A stretch of DNA of 64,000 nucleotides from IMGVR_UViG_3300023179_005186:124001-188000, one strand, 5' to 3'. Shown: positions 50,775 to 61,586, numbered from the stretch's first letter. The notes: generated from the letters alone by a model not told the origin. A program made the numbers and translations.

Positions 50775-51608
50775 ATGTCTAATCCTACAAATAGTTCATC
50801 TAATATTAGTAATAAAAGATGTATAAGTAAATTTTATTTTGGTACAAAAGATTCAAATCCTTTTGTTTACCATAATAAAGATACTGAAAAAAAAAAATCT
50901 ATTAATAAAAAAAGAAAACATAAAAATGATGAATCTGATAATGAAGATGAAGATGAAGAAAGTGATGATCCTTTTACAATAAACAAAATATTTTATGAAA
51001 ATAAAATATTTCTTAAGGAAAATCATTTGTATTTTCATACTAATGTAAATCAAAAATCTTGTGAACTAGTTAAACAATTAATGAGAACTTATAGTTCTAA
51101 ATTTAATAAATTACAAAAAACTCATACTTGTGTTAAATTTGAATGTAAGCCATTGTATATACATATATATTCTCCAGGAGGAGATGTTTATGCAGGTCTT
51201 GCTCTTTATGATTTTATAATACAATATCGTGAACATATTCCTATCTATACAATTGTAGAAGGAATTGCTGCTAGTGCAGCAACATTTATTTCTGTTGCTG
51301 GAACAAAGAGATTTATTACACCAAGTTCATATATGTTAATTCATCAACTTTCCACATTTATGTATGGAAACTTTGAACAATTAAAAGACGAATTTGATAA
51401 TTCAAAAAAACTTATGGATAAAATTATGAATATTTATTCAGAACATACTACTATTACAAAAAAACGTATTCCTAAAATACTTAAGCATGATTTAATTTGG
51501 GATGCTGAAGAATGTGTTCAAAATGGACTTGTTGATAAAATTAAATTAGTCGACTTGTTTAATGATGAAGATAAAGATGATGATCAAGAAGAAAATAATG
51601 AAGAATAA
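50775..51608 (+). CDS. clpP: ClpP-like serine protease
   Basis: IYSPGGDV, GIAASAA (Ser), MLIHQ (His) and HDLIWDAEEC..GLVD (Asp). Confidence 0.9.
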   Translation: MSNPTNSSSNISNKRCISKFYFGTKDSNPFVYHNKDTEKKKSINKKRKHKNDESDNEDEDEESDDPFTINKIFYENKIFLKENHLYFHTNVNQKSCELVKQLMRTYSSKFNKLQKTHTCVKFECKPLYIHIYSPGGDVYAGLALYDFIIQYREHIPIYTIVEGIAASAATFISVAGTKRFITPSSYMLIHQLSTFMYGNFEQLKDEFDNSKKLMDKIMNIYSEHTTITKKRIPKILKHDLIWDAEECVQNGLVDKIKLVDLFNDEDKDDDQEENNEE

Positions 51609-55864: not shown

Positions 55865-56713
55865 ATGCCTGCAAAAAATTATAGTTGTGAAAACTCAGAA
55901 TCATGCTCATTAATGTCTGTTACTAATTTAAATACTAGTTCTCATTTGAGTTCTGGCTCTGTATGTCCTGATTCAGAATCTGTACATCAACAATCTGCTT
56001 CTGTATGTCCTGATCCTAGTTCAACATGTAATAATTCAAGTTCCTTATGTCCTGACTCAAGTTCTTTATGTCCTGACTCTTGTTCATCTGTAAATAGTTC
56101 TTGTGTTACTTATTCAGATAAAACTTCCTGTTCAATAACTGTTGATGAATCCATTTGTAATAAACCATATACAAATACTTGTAAGAAAATCGATGAATGT
56201 GAAATTGTTGATATTAAAGCATGTGATAAACTTGTTCAGAAATATAATTGTTCAAGAGAAGAATTATTGGCTATTGCTGACATTATCGTTTTATTAAATT
56301 TTATTAAGAGTAAATTAATTGCTGTTAAACCAAATGTTATTTTGAGAAGAACAGAAAATTATACTGTAGATGTTAATATCGCTTGGCTAGAAAGTTTTAT
56401 TGATACATTATTTTGTGTTTTAAGAAAGAATGAAGCATATAAAGTAATAAATGTTAAAGTATGTAAATTAAAGAATGATAGTGATGAAGTTATTTCAAAC
56501 AGAACTTATTTATTAAAAGTAAAGTTTAGTACTAAAAAAGGATGTATTGTTAAAAATATTCCAATTACATTTTATTGGAGTCAATTAACAAATAACTTAT
56601 CAACAGCTTATAACAGTGTTTTAGATATTACAATTAGAAATATTACAAGTGAAATTACTGTTTTAGATGCAGCATCAGTTCGTCCTTTTTTACAAGAAAA
56701 CCCTAAACACTAA
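55865..56713 (+). CDS. Cys/Ser-rich protein with S(V/L)CPD repeats
   Basis: Four S(V/L)CPD units in the N-terminal third. Confidence 0.7.
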   Translation: MPAKNYSCENSESCSLMSVTNLNTSSHLSSGSVCPDSESVHQQSASVCPDPSSTCNNSSSLCPDSSSLCPDSCSSVNSSCVTYSDKTSCSITVDESICNKPYTNTCKKIDECEIVDIKACDKLVQKYNCSREELLAIADIIVLLNFIKSKLIAVKPNVILRRTENYTVDVNIAWLESFIDTLFCVLRKNEAYKVINVKVCKLKNDSDEVISNRTYLLKVKFSTKKGCIVKNIPITFYWSQLTNNLSTAYNSVLDITIRNITSEITVLDAASVRPFLQENPKH

Positions 56714-56795
56714 ATTAATTTTTGAATACTAACTAAATAATTTTAATTATTTAATTAATCTCAATTTAAAAAGAAGTTAATATATAATTAATATA

Positions 56796-57485
56796 ATGAG
56801 TCGAATTTTAAATGGATTGAATATGTCAGAATATGTTGTATTATCACAATTAAAGAAAAAAATGAAAAATTACTTGATTGATATTAATTGTGATAATTTT
56901 AAGCAAAGTAATTTTTCAAAAGGTTTAGTATTAAGTTTAGTGATGATTTTAGAAGAGTTATTAAATGATTCATTAAAACATGTGGTTAAGAATGAAATAA
57001 ATGGATTATATAAAATTAGTCCATTAGTTATTAATACAACAATAAATGAGTATTCCAAATATAATTTTATTTATAAATATTTAAAATCATATAATCAAAT
57101 TGTAAAGTATCATGATTCTGTTTTTTTTAATATTAAAAAAGTTTTAGATAATTTAGAATCAAAACATGGATCAAAATTAATGGTTGAAACTGAAAGTAAA
57201 AATATTTTAAGTTATATAATTTTATCTATTCAGTATGATTTAATAAATTTGACAGTAAATATGGTAAAATATTCCAAAAAGAGAACATTAAGTTCGGTTC
57301 CATTATTATTTAGTATAAAATTTTTAATTCATGAAGATATAAGTTCAAAAATAGAGTTAAAATTAGATAGTATGGAAGATAAGAATATCGAAGTTGAAGA
57401 AGATAAAGAAAAAGATACAGAAGATGAAGAAGTAGTAGAAATAGAGGAAGACGTTGACGTTGATGATGAATTAGAGGAAGATTAA
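56796..57485 (+). CDS. Putative divergent H2A-H2B histone-fold doublet with acidic tail
   Basis: H2A-like SRILNGLNMS..LKKKMKNY, MILEEL and KISP; H2B-like IKKVL and MVKYSKKRTLSS..LLFSIKFLI. Confidence 0.55.
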   Translation: MSRILNGLNMSEYVVLSQLKKKMKNYLIDINCDNFKQSNFSKGLVLSLVMILEELLNDSLKHVVKNEINGLYKISPLVINTTINEYSKYNFIYKYLKSYNQIVKYHDSVFFNIKKVLDNLESKHGSKLMVETESKNILSYIILSIQYDLINLTVNMVKYSKKRTLSSVPLLFSIKFLIHEDISSKIELKLDSMEDKNIEVEEDKEKDTEDEEVVEIEEDVDVDDELEED

Positions 57486-57507
57486 AAATATAATTTAATA
57501 ATTTAGT

Positions 57508-57533
57508 TTAGATATATAATAATATATATCTAA
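57508..57533 (+). terminator. 3' hairpin after ORF 56796
   Basis: ttagatatata-ataa-tatatatctaa. Confidence 0.6.
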
Positions 57534-57539
57534 TTAATA

Positions 57540-59474
57540 ATGAAAAAATTAAAAAAAATAAAAAAAGAGAGTAAACTCAAGACAATAGATAAGAATAAAT
57601 TTTATAGTGCAACAAGTTTAGTAAATTTCATAAGATCAGATTGTATAGTTGATTTAATTGAAACATTAAATAAAAATAATTATATAATAGATTTTGAAGA
57701 TGAATTAAGAATAAAAAAAAGAAATTTAGAAGAGTCATCAAATTCTAATTCTAATTTAAGTAATAACTGTTCTGATCTAATTACAAAAAGAAGAAGAACA
57801 TCATCATTTGATTATATTGTAGATGATGGATATAAATTTGAAGCGAATATAATAATTAAAATAAAAGAAAAATTAATAGAGAATAATGAATTATCAAAAT
57901 TAATAGAATTAAGTGATATTGATATTAATATTAGATATGAAAGAACTTTAAAATTACTTTTAAGTAAATCATATGATATATTATTGGGTAGTATATTAAT
58001 TAATGAATCAAATAAAACATATGGCTATCCAGATTTAATAGTTTCAGGTTATTGGATAAAAAAATATATAATTAATAGTCCAATAAATATAATAGGTGAT
58101 AGAAGCAAATACTATATTATTGATATAAAATCATCATCAATAAATTTGATTGGAGGTGGTGAATATGTGTCATCAGGTTTATTATATGATGGTTATAAAG
58201 CACAAATTTATATATACATACAAGCATTAAATAAAATATTAAAATCAAATATATCAATTGGATTTATATTAGGAAAAAATTATCAATATAGTACAGGTGG
58301 AAATAAAATTAGAATAGATGATCCATTTGATAAACTTGGATTAATAGATTATTCTTATGAAAAAAAGAATGGAAGAGATTTTGAAGATAAAATAATACAA
58401 GCACTTAAATGGAAAGATGATTTAAAAAAAAATTATAATAATTATTCTTTATTGCCGATTGAAAATAATTTATTATTTCCAAATATGAAAAATCCCTATG
58501 ATAAAAATTATAAAAAGATTAAAAAAACTATAGCATTAGCTAATAAAGAAATAACATTATTATGGAATTGTGGATTAAAGAATAGAGAACTAGCATGGTT
58601 AAAAGGAATAAAAAATTATGATAATGAAAATTTATCACCAGATATATTAGGATTTACAAAAAAATCATCAAGATATAATATATTATATTCAATGTTAAAA
58701 ATAAATAGGGAATCAAATGATTTGATAATATTTAACCCAATAAATAATATAAATGAATGGCAAAATAGTGTTTCAAATGAATTTTTTGTAGATTTTGAGA
58801 CATATTCAAATGAGAGGGTGTATGGTGAAGATATATATATGATTGATATTAATACTCAAATAATATATATGATTGGTGTAAATTATTCAAGTAAATTCAA
58901 GTGTTTTATATTAAAATTTAATTATCATGAAGGAATAAAAAATAAAATTAAAATAAAAAAAAATTTAAAATGTAATTATGAATCATATGTATTTTGTGAT
59001 AATGAAAAAGATTTAATAATGCAATTTGTAAAATTTATAAATTCTTTTAATATAAAAAATGATTTATCTATTTACTATAAAAATACAAGATTAATACATT
59101 GGTCAAAAGCTGAACCAATAATATTTAATAAAAAATTAAGAGAATATAAGTTAAACGAATTAATGTATAATTTACCATGGTATGATTTATTAGATATATT
59201 TAAAAATGAGAAATATCCAATTATAATAAAAGGTTGTTTTGGTTTTGGTTTAAAAGAAATAATAAGTAAATTAAATCAGTATGATTTTATAAAATTAAGT
59301 TGGCCAGAATTAGATGATGGTTTATTATCAAGTTTTAAGGCAAGAGATATATACACAGATAAAGTAGAATCTGAAAATAAGGCAATTACAATGATAGATA
59401 TAGTTGAATATAATTATATTGATTGTATAGCTTTAGATATGATATTAAAATGGATTCGTGGTCTTATTGTATAA
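57540..59474 (+). CDS. RecB/PD-(D/E)XK plus RNase H-like (YprB-type) nuclease
   Basis: GYPDLIV...IIDIK...Q...Y, FVDFET, DLL..F..K, FGLKEI and EYNYIDC. Confidence 0.75.
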   Translation: MKKLKKIKKESKLKTIDKNKFYSATSLVNFIRSDCIVDLIETLNKNNYIIDFEDELRIKKRNLEESSNSNSNLSNNCSDLITKRRRTSSFDYIVDDGYKFEANIIIKIKEKLIENNELSKLIELSDIDINIRYERTLKLLLSKSYDILLGSILINESNKTYGYPDLIVSGYWIKKYIINSPINIIGDRSKYYIIDIKSSSINLIGGGEYVSSGLLYDGYKAQIYIYIQALNKILKSNISIGFILGKNYQYSTGGNKIRIDDPFDKLGLIDYSYEKKNGRDFEDKIIQALKWKDDLKKNYNNYSLLPIENNLLFPNMKNPYDKNYKKIKKTIALANKEITLLWNCGLKNRELAWLKGIKNYDNENLSPDILGFTKKSSRYNILYSMLKINRESNDLIIFNPINNINEWQNSVSNEFFVDFETYSNERVYGEDIYMIDINTQIIYMIGVNYSSKFKCFILKFNYHEGIKNKIKIKKNLKCNYESYVFCDNEKDLIMQFVKFINSFNIKNDLSIYYKNTRLIHWSKAEPIIFNKKLREYKLNELMYNLPWYDLLDIFKNEKYPIIIKGCFGFGLKEIISKLNQYDFIKLSWPELDDGLLSSFKARDIYTDKVESENKAITMIDIVEYNYIDCIALDMILKWIRGLIV

Positions 59475-59531
59475 AATAAAAAATTGATTTTTATTTATTA
59501 TAAAATTATTAGTGGAAAATTTACTATAAGA

Positions 59532-61586
59532 ATGATTTCAAATTACAATATATTAACAGAAAATGATGAACAAATTATTCAACCAAAAAATGTAAAGGTT
59601 GAATTAATGAGTCATCAAAAAACGATGGTCTGTAAAATGTTAAAAATAGAAGATTCAGGAGAAATACATATAAATAAATTAATTCTATTAAATGGAAAAT
59701 CTATTACAAAATTTATAATAAAAACAAATTTTGCAGTTTTAGGTGATAAAGTAGGTGCAGGAAAAACATTAATGATATCATCTTTAATAAGTATTAGAAA
59801 AAAAGTTAAAGATCGTGATTTAGATTATGGAGTAAATTCAAATATTGTTTTAAAAATAAATAATAAATTTGAAAAACTAGATACGAATCTAATAGTTGTA
59901 CCACATAAACTTGTACCTCAATGGTCAGAAAATTTTGAAAAAAATATAAGTAATTTAAGCGTTTTAACAATTACAACTAACAAAGATATAGATTCTTTGA
60001 TTAAAACAATAATTGTAAATGATAAAAATATAAAAGAAGTTAATTGTTTTTTTCAATATGAAGAAATAATTCCAGAAAGGATTAATATTTACGATGTAGT
60101 AATAATAGGTGAGACAATGTATAGAAGATTTTATAAATTATGTCAAAATTTTAAATTTAATAGATTAATTATTGATGAAATAGATTCAATAAAATTACCA
60201 AAATTTATGTTATGTAATTTTAATTTTATGTGGTTAATTACTGGTACTCCAACTGGTTTATCAAATCCAAAATCAAATTATTTAACTAATTTTTTCCCAA
60301 GTATATATAATTCAAATTCAGTTTTAAATAATTTTTTTGTTTTTAAAAATGATGATAAATTTATTGAACAATCTATTGTTTTACCTAATCCTAAACGTTT
60401 AAAAATAAAATGTCTTACTCCAAAAGAATTAAATATAATTAAAAATTTAATACCAAGTTCAGTACTCCAGATGATAAATGCGGGTAATTCTGAAGAGGCA
60501 ATAAAAGCTTTAAATTGTAATGTTGATACAAATGATAATATATTACAAGTAATAACAAAAAATATTTTAGATAATATTAAATACAAAGAAATAGAATTAG
60601 AGATTGAAAATAAAAAAGTCTACGATTTGTGTCAGAAAAAAGAACACGAGTCGAAAGTAAAATTAATAGAAAATCAAATATTAAAGTTAGAAGAAAAATA
60701 TGAAGATATTAAAAAGAAGATTTATGAAATAAATGATTCTCATTGTCCTGTATGTATGGGAGAATTAATATCACCAATAATTACAGAATGTTGTAAAAGT
60801 TGTTTTTGTTTTGATTGTTTAGCAGTATCATTAGGTGAATTAAACACAAATAAATGTCTAAATTGTAGACAAATTATTACTAATTCAGATATTCATGTAA
60901 TTTCTGAATATAAAGAAGATTCTAAAATAATAACAAAAAAGTATGATCTAAAAGATAAATTAGATGTTTTAATAGATCTAGTTCAAAATAAACCAGATGG
61001 TAGTTTTATAGTATTTGCAAATTATGTAGAAACATTTGTAAAAATTGAGAAAAAATTAAAAGAATTTGGAATATCTTATCATATTTTAAAAGGACAAGCA
61101 TCAGTAGTTAAAAAAAATATTGATGATTTTAAAGAAAAAAAAGTAAAAGTATTAATGTTAAATGCAGAATACTTTGGAGCAGGTATGAATTTACAAATGA
61201 CAACTGATTTAGTAATGTTTCATAGATTTAGATATGAGATGGAAGAACAAATTATTGGTAGAGCTCAACGTTTAGGACGCACAACACAATTAAATGTTTA
61301 TTATTTATTACATGATAATGAATCAGAAAATATTGATTATAACTTTAATTTTGAAGATCAAGGATCAATTCATTATATAGATTGGCTTAAAAATGATAAA
61401 TTAAATACAAATAATATGACTGATTTAAATGAAGATTATTTAAAAGTTAAAAATAATGAAGAAGAATATTTAATTTATAAAGTACCAGATGATAATGATA
61501 AAGAAATAGATGAAGATTTAGATATTTTTAAAGAAAATATCAAACAATTTAATTTAAATTTTGAAGAATTCGAAATAATAAATTAG
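59532..61586 (+). CDS. SNF2-family helicase with RING finger (RAD5/16-like)
   Basis: LGDKVGAGKT, IIDE, TGTP, RING CPVC..CC..FC..C..CLNCR, GAGMNL and QIIGRAQRLG; ATG at 59532 follows AAAATTGA at 59480-59487. Confidence 0.85.
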   Translation: MISNYNILTENDEQIIQPKNVKVELMSHQKTMVCKMLKIEDSGEIHINKLILLNGKSITKFIIKTNFAVLGDKVGAGKTLMISSLISIRKKVKDRDLDYGVNSNIVLKINNKFEKLDTNLIVVPHKLVPQWSENFEKNISNLSVLTITTNKDIDSLIKTIIVNDKNIKEVNCFFQYEEIIPERINIYDVVIIGETMYRRFYKLCQNFKFNRLIIDEIDSIKLPKFMLCNFNFMWLITGTPTGLSNPKSNYLTNFFPSIYNSNSVLNNFFVFKNDDKFIEQSIVLPNPKRLKIKCLTPKELNIIKNLIPSSVLQMINAGNSEEAIKALNCNVDTNDNILQVITKNILDNIKYKEIELEIENKKVYDLCQKKEHESKVKLIENQILKLEEKYEDIKKKIYEINDSHCPVCMGELISPIITECCKSCFCFDCLAVSLGELNTNKCLNCRQIITNSDIHVISEYKEDSKIITKKYDLKDKLDVLIDLVQNKPDGSFIVFANYVETFVKIEKKLKEFGISYHILKGQASVVKKNIDDFKEKKVKVLMLNAEYFGAGMNLQMTTDLVMFHRFRYEMEEQIIGRAQRLGRTTQLNVYYLLHDNESENIDYNFNFEDQGSIHYIDWLKNDKLNTNNMTDLNEDYLKVKNNEEEYLIYKVPDDNDKEIDEDLDIFKENIKQFNLNFEEFEIIN

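What the first reader, a model, noticed from the sequence alone, without database searches (positions are those of the whole stretch)
56796..57485. Unannotated-looking H2A-H2B histone doublet with an acidic tail
Seen by manual alignment: SRILNGLNMS..LKKKMKNY ~ H2A SRAGLQFP..LRKGNY; IKKVL ~ H2B IYKVL; MVKYSKKRTLSS..LLFSIKFLI ~ LAHYNKRSTITS..IQTAVRLLL; then ~30 D/E-rich residues. Established: viral histone doublets exist, and Marseilleviridae use the H2B-H2A order. Inference: an H2A-H2B-order doublet with few DNA-contact Arg and an acidic tail may act as a histone mimic or chaperone rather than in nucleosomes.
Basis: inference. Interest (0 to 1): 0.6.

Follow-up and report, generated by a model that had tools for sequence, protein, structure and literature searches.

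The report
Cryptic reversed-order H2A-H2B histone doublet
This giant-virus gene encodes two fused histone folds in H2A-then-H2B order plus an acidic tail; databases list the family only as "hypothetical", it is conserved across klosneuvirus-type giant viruses, and it nearly always sits beside a DNA-remodelling SNF2-RING enzyme gene.

Summary
Window 56796-57485 (+) is a real 229-aa gene. AlphaFold2 (core pLDDT above 90) gives two histone folds in an intramolecular handshake, followed by a disordered tail with 62% D/E.

Pfam and PDB sequence searches on the protein itself find nothing. Homology is shown by a chain instead. Its family matches a broader tier of giant-virus proteins (hhalign E 2e-28). 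That tier's profile hits H2A with its first half (E 6e-5) and H2B with its second half (E 2e-6). The H2A-then-H2B order is therefore correct.

The family has 195 cluster representatives, is single-copy in this contig, and is annotated "hypothetical" in Gaeavirus and in cultured Fadolivirus. It is distinct from the two BLAST-detectable reversed doublets already published for Klosneuvirus and Indivirus.

Three new points:
- The scarcity of Arg is largely compositional; conserved Lys occupy the DNA-loop positions.
- A dimer of doublets through an H2B-type four-helix bundle is predicted (0.67 versus 0.00 for controls).
- An orthologous Rad5/HLTF-like SNF2-RING gene lies just downstream in 8 of 11 informative loci.

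No H3/H4 partner was found. The most likely role is a non-nucleosomal DNA-bound partner or substrate of that ATPase. This is a new variant of a known kind.

The parts
56796..57485 (+). CDS of the 229-aa histone-fold doublet (stop codon included)
   Evidence: ORF; conserved family; AF2 model with pLDDT 80 overall and above 90 in the core
56796..57110 (+). H2A-like histone fold, aa 1-105: short alphaN (10-12), alpha1 16-29, alpha2 40-62, alpha3 76-85, alphaC 87-97; no docking domain
   Evidence: Secondary structure. The superfamily profile aligns this half to H2A/H2A.Z (8qz0_L E 5.8e-5; domain E 7e-3). Structure alone does not resolve the class
57111..57383 (+). H2B-like histone fold with alphaC, aa 106-196: alpha1 113-123, alpha2 132-159, L2 'KKRT' 161-164, alpha3 167-177, alphaC 180-196
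   Evidence: VIA-align: residues 107-200 on H2B chains, Z 7.1-7.3, rmsd 2.1-2.2 A over about 90 aa. Profile versus H2B, E 2.4e-6 to 1e-4. K162 is basic in 99% of 76 superfamily members
57384..57482 (+). Disordered acidic C-terminal tail, aa 197-229
   Evidence: pLDDT about 30; 62% D/E and net -18; the tail is acidic in all 36 close relatives and in 50 of 66 distant relatives
57045..57089 (+). Predicted self-association surface, part 1 (aa 84-98, alphaC of the H2A-like half)
   Evidence: complex prediction interface list
57246..57323 (+). Predicted self-association surface, part 2 (aa 151-176, C-terminal end of alpha2 plus alpha3 of the H2B-like fold, i.e. the four-helix-bundle surface)
   Evidence: complex prediction: ipSAE 0.67 (runs 0.69/0.67/0.63) against a best control of 0.00. 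These residues are not more conserved than the rest of the core
57508..57533 (+). Perfect 11-bp stem / 4-nt loop hairpin, 23 nt after the stop and before the next ATG; a likely transcript 3'-end signal
   Evidence: the repeat finder I6. Hairpins with different sequences sit at the same place in orthologous loci L001 (11/4) and L002 (15/4). The link to the Mimiviridae 'hairpin rule' comes from my own knowledge
55865..56713 (+). Upstream 282-aa Cys/Ser-rich ORF, a conserved neighbour in the ORF's own clade; function unknown
   Evidence: No Pfam hit; orthologues directly upstream in L001, L002, L004 and L005
57540..59474 (+). 644-aa putative nuclease gene, inserted between the doublet and the SNF2 gene only in this clade
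   Evidence: Orthologues in L001, L002, L004 and L005. The counterpart in the P0062 contig carries PF13482 RNase_H_2. No Pfam hit for the window copy itself
59484..61586 (+). SNF2 - RING - Helicase_C ATPase (Rad5/Rad8/HLTF-type architecture); starts at TTG 59484 or ATG 59532; the conserved linked partner gene
   Evidence: Pfam SNF2-rel_dom 2.4e-13, Helicase_C 8e-10, RING 2e-4 below the cut-off. The closest solved relative is Rad8. Orthologues lie downstream of the doublet in 8 of 11 informative loci

Best explanation
The ORF encodes a highly diverged histone pseudodimer: an H2A-derived fold fused to an H2B-derived fold with its alphaC helix, followed by a disordered acidic tail. It is the single-copy orthologue of a family found across Klosneuvirinae-type giant viruses. 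Shown: the fold, the order of the two halves, the breadth of the family, and the gene linkage. Inferred: it does not build canonical nucleosomes. Instead it sits on DNA as an H2A-H2B-like module, contacting DNA through conserved Lys and the H2B L2 'KKRT' loop. It can pair into a dimer of doublets through an H2B-type four-helix bundle. It works together with the neighbouring Rad5/HLTF-like SNF2-RING ATPase, either as its DNA-anchoring cofactor or as the substrate it moves or ubiquitinates. Precedents are MHF with FANCM, CHRAC-14/16 with ISWI, Dpb3-Dpb4 with Pol epsilon, and NC2 with Mot1. The acidic tail would then tune DNA binding or recruit basic partners.
For: Fold: AF2 pLDDT 80 overall and above 90 in the core, with two helix-loop-long helix-loop-helix units. 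Foldseek top hits are single-chain H2A(.Z)-H2B constructs, E 5e-5 and probability 1.00. VIA gives Z 12.2 to a Melbournevirus doublet, 10.9 to the SOS histone domain and 10.1 to the M. kandleri doublet, and residues 107-200 match H2B chains at Z 7.3, rmsd 2.1-2.2 A. The ESM Atlas's own model also lands on histone doublets. Homology and order: hhalign of A1 against the distant tier A4 gives probability 99.8 and E 2.1e-28 over residues 17-194. The A4 HMM hits this ORF at E 5e-26. The A4 profile against PDB aligns positions 9-113 to H2A.Z (E 5.8e-5) and positions 137-224 to H2B (E 2.4e-6); the combined profile A3 confirms this. Five of 76 members touch Pfam Histone, best E 5e-5. Breadth: 195 representatives, including Gaeavirus AYV80257.1 and Fadolivirus QKF94160.1, both annotated hypothetical, and BFVD hits in nine Klosneuvirinae. 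DNA-contact positions: K20, K24, K65, K162 and R163 are conserved across the superfamily, and K22, K24, K36, K65, K115 and K127 are invariant in the close family. Self-pairing: ipSAE 0.67 against 0.00 for the controls, with a symmetric alpha2/alpha3 interface. Linkage: the orthologous SNF2-RING gene (phmmer E about 1e-150) lies immediately downstream in L003 (Fadolivirus), L007, L008, L009 and L012, and one gene further on in the window, L001 and L005, while the other flanking genes differ between the tiers. Non-nucleosomal reading: no histone-fold gene was found in the contig with PF00125, PF00808, or the A1 and A4 profiles apart from this ORF itself, and core K+R is 13.3% against 13.1% for the proteome.
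Against: The ORF's own family profile does not hit any histone in PDB or Pfam, so the H2A and H2B assignment rests on transitive homology plus structure. The N-terminal half folded alone cannot be assigned to H2A by structure (Z 5-6.3 for many classes, rmsd 6-9 A). The functional link to SNF2-RING rests on gene order only. The predicted interface residues are not better conserved than the rest of the core (0.60 versus 0.70), and a four-helix-bundle pass may be the model's memory of histones. DNA binding is untested, and the whole protein has net charge -12. The contig is only about 28% complete, so absence of H3/H4 is weak evidence.
Confidence: 0.45

Rival explanations
1. Genome-packaging viral histone. 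Dimers, or longer stacks, of the doublet joined through H2B-H2B four-helix bundles wrap viral DNA into tetrasome-like or hypernucleosome-like particles in the factory or virion, without any H3/H4.
For: Homodimer predicted through the canonical four-helix-bundle surface. The H2B L2 'KKRT' loop and alpha1 Lys are conserved. The gene is single-copy and conserved across the group. It lacks the early-promoter octamer AAAATTGA, which sits upstream of 37 of 238 genes, so it is probably not an early gene. Many distant-tier members carry Lys-rich N-terminal tails like true histones.
Against: Core K+R content only equals the proteome mean, and the whole protein is acidic (net -12). A long acidic tail is atypical for packaging histones. 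There are no virion proteomics data. The interface is not specially conserved.
Confidence: 0.2
2. Host-directed histone mimic or chaperone (the first reader's idea, and also Talbert et al.'s suggestion for the other klosneuvirus doublets). The H2A-H2B look-alike competes with host H2A-H2B, or its acidic tail captures host basic proteins, helping to dismantle host chromatin.
For: Acidic tail conserved throughout the family. No viral H3/H4 found. By manual alignment, part of the H2A acidic-patch positions stay acidic (E53, E54 and D58 invariant or nearly so). Klosneuvirinae, unlike other Imitervirales, degrade the host nucleus (PMC11814242). Talbert et al. 2022 proposed nucleosome destabilisation for the related doublets.
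Against: There is no H2A docking domain to engage H3-H4. The conserved pairing with a viral SNF2-RING gene suggests a viral DNA transaction instead. No nuclear-targeting evidence exists, and nothing was tested against host proteins.
Confidence: 0.2
3. Not a functional histone-like gene: either a chance ORF in AT-rich DNA or a generic helical protein that only superficially resembles histones.
For: No direct Pfam or PDB sequence hit for the ORF or its close family. Helical folds give middling Z-scores easily (note).
Against: 195 conserved relatives with invariant residues. hhalign E 2e-28 to a tier whose profile hits H2A and H2B in the correct halves. Doublet-specific structural matches at Z 10-12 covering the whole core. 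Present at 100% identity in several independent lake metagenomes and in metatranscriptome contigs.
Confidence: 0.02

Closest known systems
Klosneuvirus KNV1 and Indivirus H2A-H2B-like doublets (ARF11920.1, ARF09917.1; Talbert, Armache and Henikoff 2022, PMC9145170)
   Same: Same virus group, same reversed H2A-then-H2B order, and no H3/H4 partner detected in the genomes.
   Different: Those proteins are BLAST-detectable against eukaryotic H2A (25-33% identity) and keep motifs such as 'AGLQFSV' and 'LKQVHPE'. They lack tails and are 8-13 residues short in H2B alpha2-L2-alpha3. This ORF gives no Pfam or PDB sequence hit, has a full-length 28-residue alpha2, and has an acidic tail. In BFVD the Indivirus doublet ranks well below the nine 'uncharacterized' Klosneuvirinae orthologues, which include a separate 341-aa KNV1 protein.
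Marseilleviridae H2B-H2A doublets (PDB 7n8n, 7lv8; mini variant 9cvt)
   Same: A fused pair of H2A-class and H2B-class histone folds in a giant virus; structural match at Z 11.5-12.2.
   Different: Opposite domain order. Those pair with an H4-H3 doublet to form nucleosome-like particles and are abundant in virions (PMC11814242). No partner was found here, the core is not especially basic, and there is an acidic tail.
Eukaryotic H2A-H2B dimer
   Same: Each half aligns to the corresponding histone by profile. The H2B alphaC helix and the L2 'K-R/K-S/T' loop are retained.
   Different: A single chain, with no H2A docking domain or C-terminal tail. The Arg at the L1 and L2 minor-groove positions are replaced by Lys or lost (manual mapping). 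Self-pairing through the H2B four-helix-bundle surface is predicted, which free H2A-H2B is not known to do (the comparison is from my own knowledge).
Non-histone H2A/H2B-like fold pairs that serve DNA enzymes: CHRAC-14/16 with ISWI (2byk), Dpb3-Dpb4 with Pol epsilon (5y27, 6wjv), NC2 with Mot1 (1jfi, 4wzs), MHF1-MHF2 with FANCM (4drb)
   Same: Structural and profile matches (Z 5.3-6.3; NC2beta E 4e-5; Dpb4 E 2.4e-4). They act as non-nucleosomal DNA-binding accessory modules of SF2 ATPases or polymerases, and several carry acidic tails (own knowledge). Here the gene is linked to an SNF2-RING ATPase gene.
   Different: Those are two separate polypeptides of cellular origin. The matches are weaker than those to H2B. 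No physical interaction has been shown here.
Self-pairing double histone folds of prokaryotes (Methanopyrus kandleri HMk 1f1e; Thermus 1wwi; Aquifex 1r4v)
   Same: Single-chain pseudodimers, Z 8-10; a dimer of doublets is predicted here as well.
   Different: There is no H2A or H2B class signal in those proteins, and they come from different lineages.

Membership tests
Histone fold superfamily (double histone fold / pseudodimer) | Two alpha1-L1-alpha2-L2-alpha3 units in one chain, packed in an antiparallel handshake | tested here: met
   AF2 helices 16-29/40-62/76-85 and 113-123/132-159/167-177. Whole-core superposition on solved doublets at Z 10-12. Foldseek probability 1.00.
Histone fold superfamily (double histone fold / pseudodimer) | Sequence match to Pfam Histone (PF00125) above the gathering score | tested here: not met
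   No Pfam hit for the ORF at E<=1. Only 5 of 76 superfamily members touch PF00125, best E 5e-5.
Histone fold superfamily (double histone fold / pseudodimer) | Statistically supported profile-level homology to core histones | tested here: met
   Transitive: A1 to A4 by hhalign, E 2.1e-28; A4 to H2A at 5.8e-5 and to H2B at 2.4e-6; the combined profile A3 hits H2B at 4e-6. The direct A1 profile against PDB gave nothing.
H2A class (N-terminal half) | 'AGLQFPV' alphaN/alpha1 signature and profile alignment to H2A | tested here: inconclusive
   Clear in the distant tier ('KAGL-FNVN') but degenerate in this ORF ('NGLNMSEYV'). Structure of the half folded alone does not discriminate the class.
H2A class (N-terminal half) | C-terminal docking domain that binds H3-H4 | tested here: not met
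   After alphaC (87-97), only a linker of about 15 residues leads into the second fold.
H2B class (C-terminal half) | Long alphaC helix after alpha3 and an H2B-specific structural match | tested here: met
   Helix 180-196. Residues 107-200 superpose on seven different H2B chains at Z 7.1-7.3, rmsd 2.1-2.2 A, above NF-YB (6.1) and Dpb4 (5.9).
H2B class (C-terminal half) | L2 DNA-binding loop 'Y-N-K-R/K-S-T' | tested here: met
   'YSKKRT' at 159-164. K162 is basic in 99% and R163 in 76% of 76 superfamily members, and the loop aligns to H2B 'YNKKST'.
Nucleosome-forming viral histone doublets (Marseilleviridae type) | H2B-H2A order together with a co-encoded H4-H3 partner | tested here: not met
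   The order is reversed. There is no PF00125 or PF00808 match and no paralogue in the 316-kb contig. Caveat: the contig is about 28% complete.
Nucleosome-forming viral histone doublets (Marseilleviridae type) | Abundant in virions; wraps DNA into nucleosome-like particles | not testable with these tools
   Needs virion proteomics and reconstitution.
Published klosneuvirus reversed doublets (Talbert 2022) | H2A-then-H2B order in a Klosneuvirinae genome | tested here: met
   nearest named relatives are Gaeavirus and Fadolivirus.
Published klosneuvirus reversed doublets (Talbert 2022) | BLAST-level identity to eukaryotic H2A (25-33%) and a shortened H2B alpha2-L2-alpha3 | tested here: not met
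   No sequence-level hit. alpha2 is a full 28 residues. I did not align those two proteins directly, because that would have meant typing their sequences.
Histone-fold cofactors of SF2 ATPases (CHRAC, MHF, NC2 type) | Physical complex with the ATPase | not tested
   Only gene linkage was shown (8 of 11 loci).

The most novel reading that the evidence does not exclude
Klosneuvirus-type giant viruses carry a minimal, self-contained chromatin module. An H2A-H2B-only doublet assembles by an H2B-H2B four-helix bundle into tetrasome-like particles on viral DNA without any H3/H4. A dedicated, co-inherited Rad5/HLTF-like SNF2-RING enzyme slides, evicts or ubiquitinates it, for example on the invariant alphaC lysines K185 and K189, which lie near the position of H2B K120.
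Probability: 0.15. Interest if true: 0.8.

Novelty: new variant of a known kind. Interest (0 to 1): 0.6.

Why it matters
Viral histone doublets are central to current debates on how nucleosomes arose. So far the well-studied cases are H2B-H2A and H4-H3 pairs of Marseilleviridae and their relatives.

This finding shows that a whole subfamily of Mimiviridae, including the cultured Fadolivirus, carries a single conserved doublet in the opposite order that sequence-based surveys have missed. It also shows that the gene is co-inherited with an SNF2-RING ATPase gene.

That gives a concrete, testable pair for two questions. Can an H2A-H2B-type module organise DNA without H3-H4? Do viruses encode their own histone-remodeller or histone-E3 systems?

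It also illustrates that annotation by Pfam alone under-counts viral histones in extremely AT-rich genomes.

Tried and rejected
- Pfam on the ORF, phmmer against PDB and the close-family profile against PDB gave nothing. The only hit was haemoglobin at E 1.1, which is spurious.
- Folding the N-terminal half alone and searching it confirmed a histone fold but could not assign a class: Z was 5-6.3 for Dpb3, CHRAC, H2B, NF-YB and H2A alike, with rmsd 6-9 A.
- Foldseek's colinear alignments to engineered H2B-H2A single chains cannot decide domain order, because the pseudodimer is nearly symmetric. Order was settled by the sequence profiles.
- Two Pfam scans of guessed members did not locate the five PF00125-positive members. 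Only P0120 appeared, at E 0.16, on its second fold.
- The search for related loci with the diverse alignment A4 failed because no stretch was conserved enough. The tighter alignments returned only 1-2 loci each.
- The complete Fadolivirus and L008 records could not be searched for H3/H4 because they are not held.
- Expression: a metatranscriptome holds contigs identical to 57101-57507 and to both neighbouring genes. These are contigs from an RNA library that may contain DNA, so transcription is not shown. The contig ends near the hairpin are also seen in DNA assemblies, so they say nothing about transcript ends.
- The interleaved inverted repeats inside the CDS are not conserved in orthologues, so I dropped them as a functional element.
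- The interface-conservation test did not support the predicted dimer.
Only the standard code was used.

Full report
**What is there.** The window is part of a 315,722-bp IMG/VR giant-virus contig (CheckV completeness about 28%) with roughly 20% G+C. At 56796-57485 on the + strand there is an ATG-to-stop ORF of 229 aa. Residues 1-195 form a conserved core. Residues 196-229 are 62% Asp/Glu with net charge -18, the most acidic C-terminus among the 238 genes I called in the contig. The start at Met1 is supported by a conserved N-terminus in 34 of 36 aligned relatives, although database copies start at Met10. A perfect 11-bp hairpin lies 23 nt after the stop (57508-57533). Hairpins of different sequence occupy the same position in two orthologous loci, as expected for mimivirid transcript ends; that last link is from my own knowledge. 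The mimivirid early-promoter octamer AAAATTGA lies upstream of 37 of 238 genes, against 10 in the downstream control, but not upstream of this gene.

**Is it a histone doublet?** Sequence searches on the protein itself are blank: Pfam at E<=1, phmmer against PDB and the close-family profile against PDB. Structure is clear. AlphaFold2 with a 36-sequence alignment gives pLDDT 80 overall and above 90 over the core, with pTM 0.77. The model has two helix-loop-long helix-loop-helix units (16-29/40-62/76-85 plus helix 87-97, and 113-123/132-159/167-177 plus helix 180-196) and a disordered tail. Foldseek's best PDB hits are single-chain H2A(.Z)-H2B constructs (E 5e-5, probability 1.00), followed by Melbournevirus doublets, the M. 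kandleri doublet and the SOS histone domain. VIA-align, which does not depend on Foldseek, gives Z 12.2 (rmsd 3.2 A over 158 aa) to a Melbournevirus doublet, with other solved doublets at Z 10-12. The ESM Atlas's own model of the protein also lands on histone doublets.

**Which half is which?** Residues 107-200 superpose on seven different H2B chains at Z 7.1-7.3 and rmsd 2.1-2.2 A over about 90 residues, including the H2B-specific alphaC. That is above NF-YB (6.1), Dpb4 (5.9) and CHRAC (5.7). The N-terminal half folded alone is a histone fold, but its class cannot be resolved by structure. Sequence profiles settle the question.

An exhaustive profile search found 195 cluster representatives at E<=1e-3. 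These split into a close tier (36 representatives at E<1e-30) and a distant tier of 250-440-aa proteins that match across both folds. The two tiers are homologous beyond doubt: hhalign gives probability 99.8 and E 2.1e-28 over residues 17-194, and the distant-tier HMM hits this ORF at E 5e-26.

The distant-tier profile then hits solved histones. Positions 9-113 align to H2A.Z (E 5.8e-5), with the motif 'KAGL-FNVN--K--LK-Y' over 'RAGLQFPVGRIKRYLKRH'. Positions 137-224 align to H2B (E 2.4e-6 to 1e-4), with 'YAKKKSLD' over 'YNKKSTIS'. A combined profile that includes the ORF's own clade gives the same result. Five of 76 members also touch Pfam Histone, best E 5e-5. Foldseek's colinear alignment to engineered H2B-H2A chains only reflects the pseudo-symmetry of the dimer.

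**Who has it, and is it known?**
- The best viral structural matches are 'uncharacterized' proteins of Gaeavirus (47% identity), Catovirus, Fadolivirus, Hyperionvirus, Terrestrivirus, Klosneuvirus, Edafosvirus, Yasminevirus and Hokovirus. All rank above the Marseillevirus histones.
- P0066 is Gaeavirus AYV80257.1 and P0136 is Fadolivirus QKF94160.1 (gp0702). Both are annotated hypothetical.
- The Fadolivirus genome paper does not mention histones.
- Talbert et al. 2022 already reported reversed H2A-H2B-like doublets in Klosneuvirus KNV1 and Indivirus and found no H3/H4 in those genomes. Those proteins are BLAST-detectable, keep motifs such as 'LKQVHPE', lack tails and have a shortened H2B part. 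In BFVD the Indivirus doublet ranks far below the orthologues of this family, and KNV1 contributes a separate 341-aa uncharacterized protein.
- Irwin and Richards 2024, a 2025 metagenomic survey and a 2026 review of double histone folds do not mention klosneuviruses or Imitervirales.

I conclude that this is an undescribed, much more diverged lineage of a known kind. I could not align it directly to the two published proteins.

**Clues to function.**
1. *Charge.* The proteome has K 10.9% and R 2.2%. The core's K/(K+R) ratio is 0.92, and its K+R content (13.3%) equals the proteome mean (13.1%). The lack of Arg is therefore largely compositional, but the core is also not histone-like in basicity.
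2. *Conserved basic positions.* K20, K24, K65, K162 and R163 are conserved across the superfamily. K22, K24, K36, K65, K115 and K127 are invariant in the close family. By manual mapping these fall on alpha1, L1 and L2, including the H2B L2 loop.
3. *No docking domain.* The H2A-like half ends in a short linker, with no docking domain.
4. *No partner histone.* No other histone-fold gene is detectable in the contig with PF00125, PF00808 or the family profiles. The contig is incomplete, so this is weak evidence.
5. *Tails.* The acidic tail is a superfamily trait, with median D/E of 33% and at least 25% in 50 of 66 distant members. Many distant members add a Lys-rich N-terminal tail and a Lys-rich C-terminal end.
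6. *Self-pairing.* Two copies of residues 1-200 are predicted to pair, with ipSAE 0.67 (runs 0.69/0.67/0.63) against 0.00 for the best of three controls, identical contacts in all runs, and partner pLDDT of at least 85. That mark was reached by 20 of 30 solved homomers and 1 of 23 solved monomers. The symmetric interface uses residues 151-160 and 168-176 (end of alpha2 plus alpha3 of the H2B-like fold, the classic four-helix-bundle surface) and residues 84-98. Two caveats apply: the pass may reflect the model's memory of histone tetramers, and these residues are not better conserved than the rest of the core.
7. *Gene linkage.* An SNF2 - RING - Helicase_C gene (window 59484/59532-61586) has Rad8, the Rad5/HLTF orthologue, as its closest solved relative. 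Its orthologue (phmmer E about 1e-150) lies immediately downstream on the same strand in Fadolivirus (L003), L007, L008, L009 and L012. It lies one gene further on in the window, L001 and L005, where a 644-aa putative nuclease gene is inserted. It is absent within reach in L002, L010 and the P0062 contig. That is 8 of 11 informative loci. Between the two tiers the other flanking genes differ, so only this pair has been kept across about 16-20% protein identity.

**Interpretation.** The identification as a reversed H2A-H2B histone-fold doublet is secure; I put it at about 0.95. For function I commit to a non-nucleosomal, DNA-bound H2A-H2B-like module that acts with, or is acted on by, the linked SNF2-RING ATPase. 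It is possibly a dimer of doublets, with the acidic tail modulating DNA binding or partner binding. This follows the precedent of MHF-FANCM, CHRAC-ISWI, Dpb3/4-Pol epsilon and NC2-Mot1. My confidence in this mechanism is 0.45, and it rests on inference from linkage, conserved loops and prediction. The rivals are a packaging histone forming H3/H4-free particles (0.2) and a host-directed mimic or chaperone (0.2). A non-functional ORF is excluded.

**Ecology and expression.** Near-identical DNA occurs in lake and freshwater metagenomes from nine studies. Contigs identical to part of the gene (57101-57507) and to both neighbours occur in one metatranscriptome. This is compatible with transcription but does not prove it.

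**Verdict.** This is a new variant of a known kind, with interest 0.6.

Noticed in passing
window 56840-56918: Two perfect inverted-repeat pairs lie inside the CDS, interleaved, each with 30 nt between its arms: 14 nt at 56840-56853/56884-56897 and 13 nt at 56863-56875/56906-56918. My rough chance expectation is about 0.01 per pair. They are not present in the orthologous genes of L001 and L002, so they are probably strain-specific or accidental.
   Followed up: partly
window 57540-59474: A 644-aa ORF with no Pfam hit. By eye it has a PD-(D/E)XK-like motif ('GYPDLIV...YYIIDIKSS') in the N-terminal half and DEDD-exonuclease-like motifs ('FVDFETYS', 'YNYIDC') in the C-terminal half. Its counterpart in a relative's contig carries PF13482 RNase_H_2. 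It sits between the doublet and the SNF2 gene only in this clade.
   Followed up: partly
window 55865-56713: A 282-aa ORF with a Cys/Ser-rich repetitive N-terminus ('SLCPDSSSLCPDS') and a conserved C-terminal domain. It has no Pfam hit and is always directly upstream of the doublet in the close clade (L001, L002, L004, L005).
   Followed up: partly
whole contig G000: The Mimiviridae early-promoter octamer AAAATTGA occurs within 80 nt upstream of 37 of 238 called genes, against 10 in downstream control regions. This supports a mimivirid transcription system in this lake virus.
   Followed up: partly
L003 14027-16225; L009 4185-6095; L012 14603-16750: A UvrD/PIF1-type (AAA_30, UvrD_C_2) helicase gene recurs within a few kb of the doublet-SNF2 pair in three distant loci, hinting at a DNA-repair or replication neighbourhood.
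   Followed up: no
window 50775-51608: A ClpP-like protease gene (PF00574, E 7e-29); a ClpP-like gene also lies upstream of the doublet in L002.
   Followed up: no
window 63280 onward (runs off the window; 2033 aa in the contig): A very large ORF with no Pfam hit in its first 240 residues; a 2048-aa counterpart occupies the same position in L001.
   Followed up: no
alignment A1, members P0046-P0060: Long-tailed family members (tails of about 60-125 aa) end in a Lys-rich patch ('KKSKSKSK') after the acidic stretch. This acidic-then-basic tail architecture is also seen in the distant tier.
   Followed up: partly
window 56732-56735: One-base insertions (C) in the intergenic spacer upstream of the doublet gene occur in contigs from other samples of the same lake study. 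This is minor strain variation.
   Followed up: no
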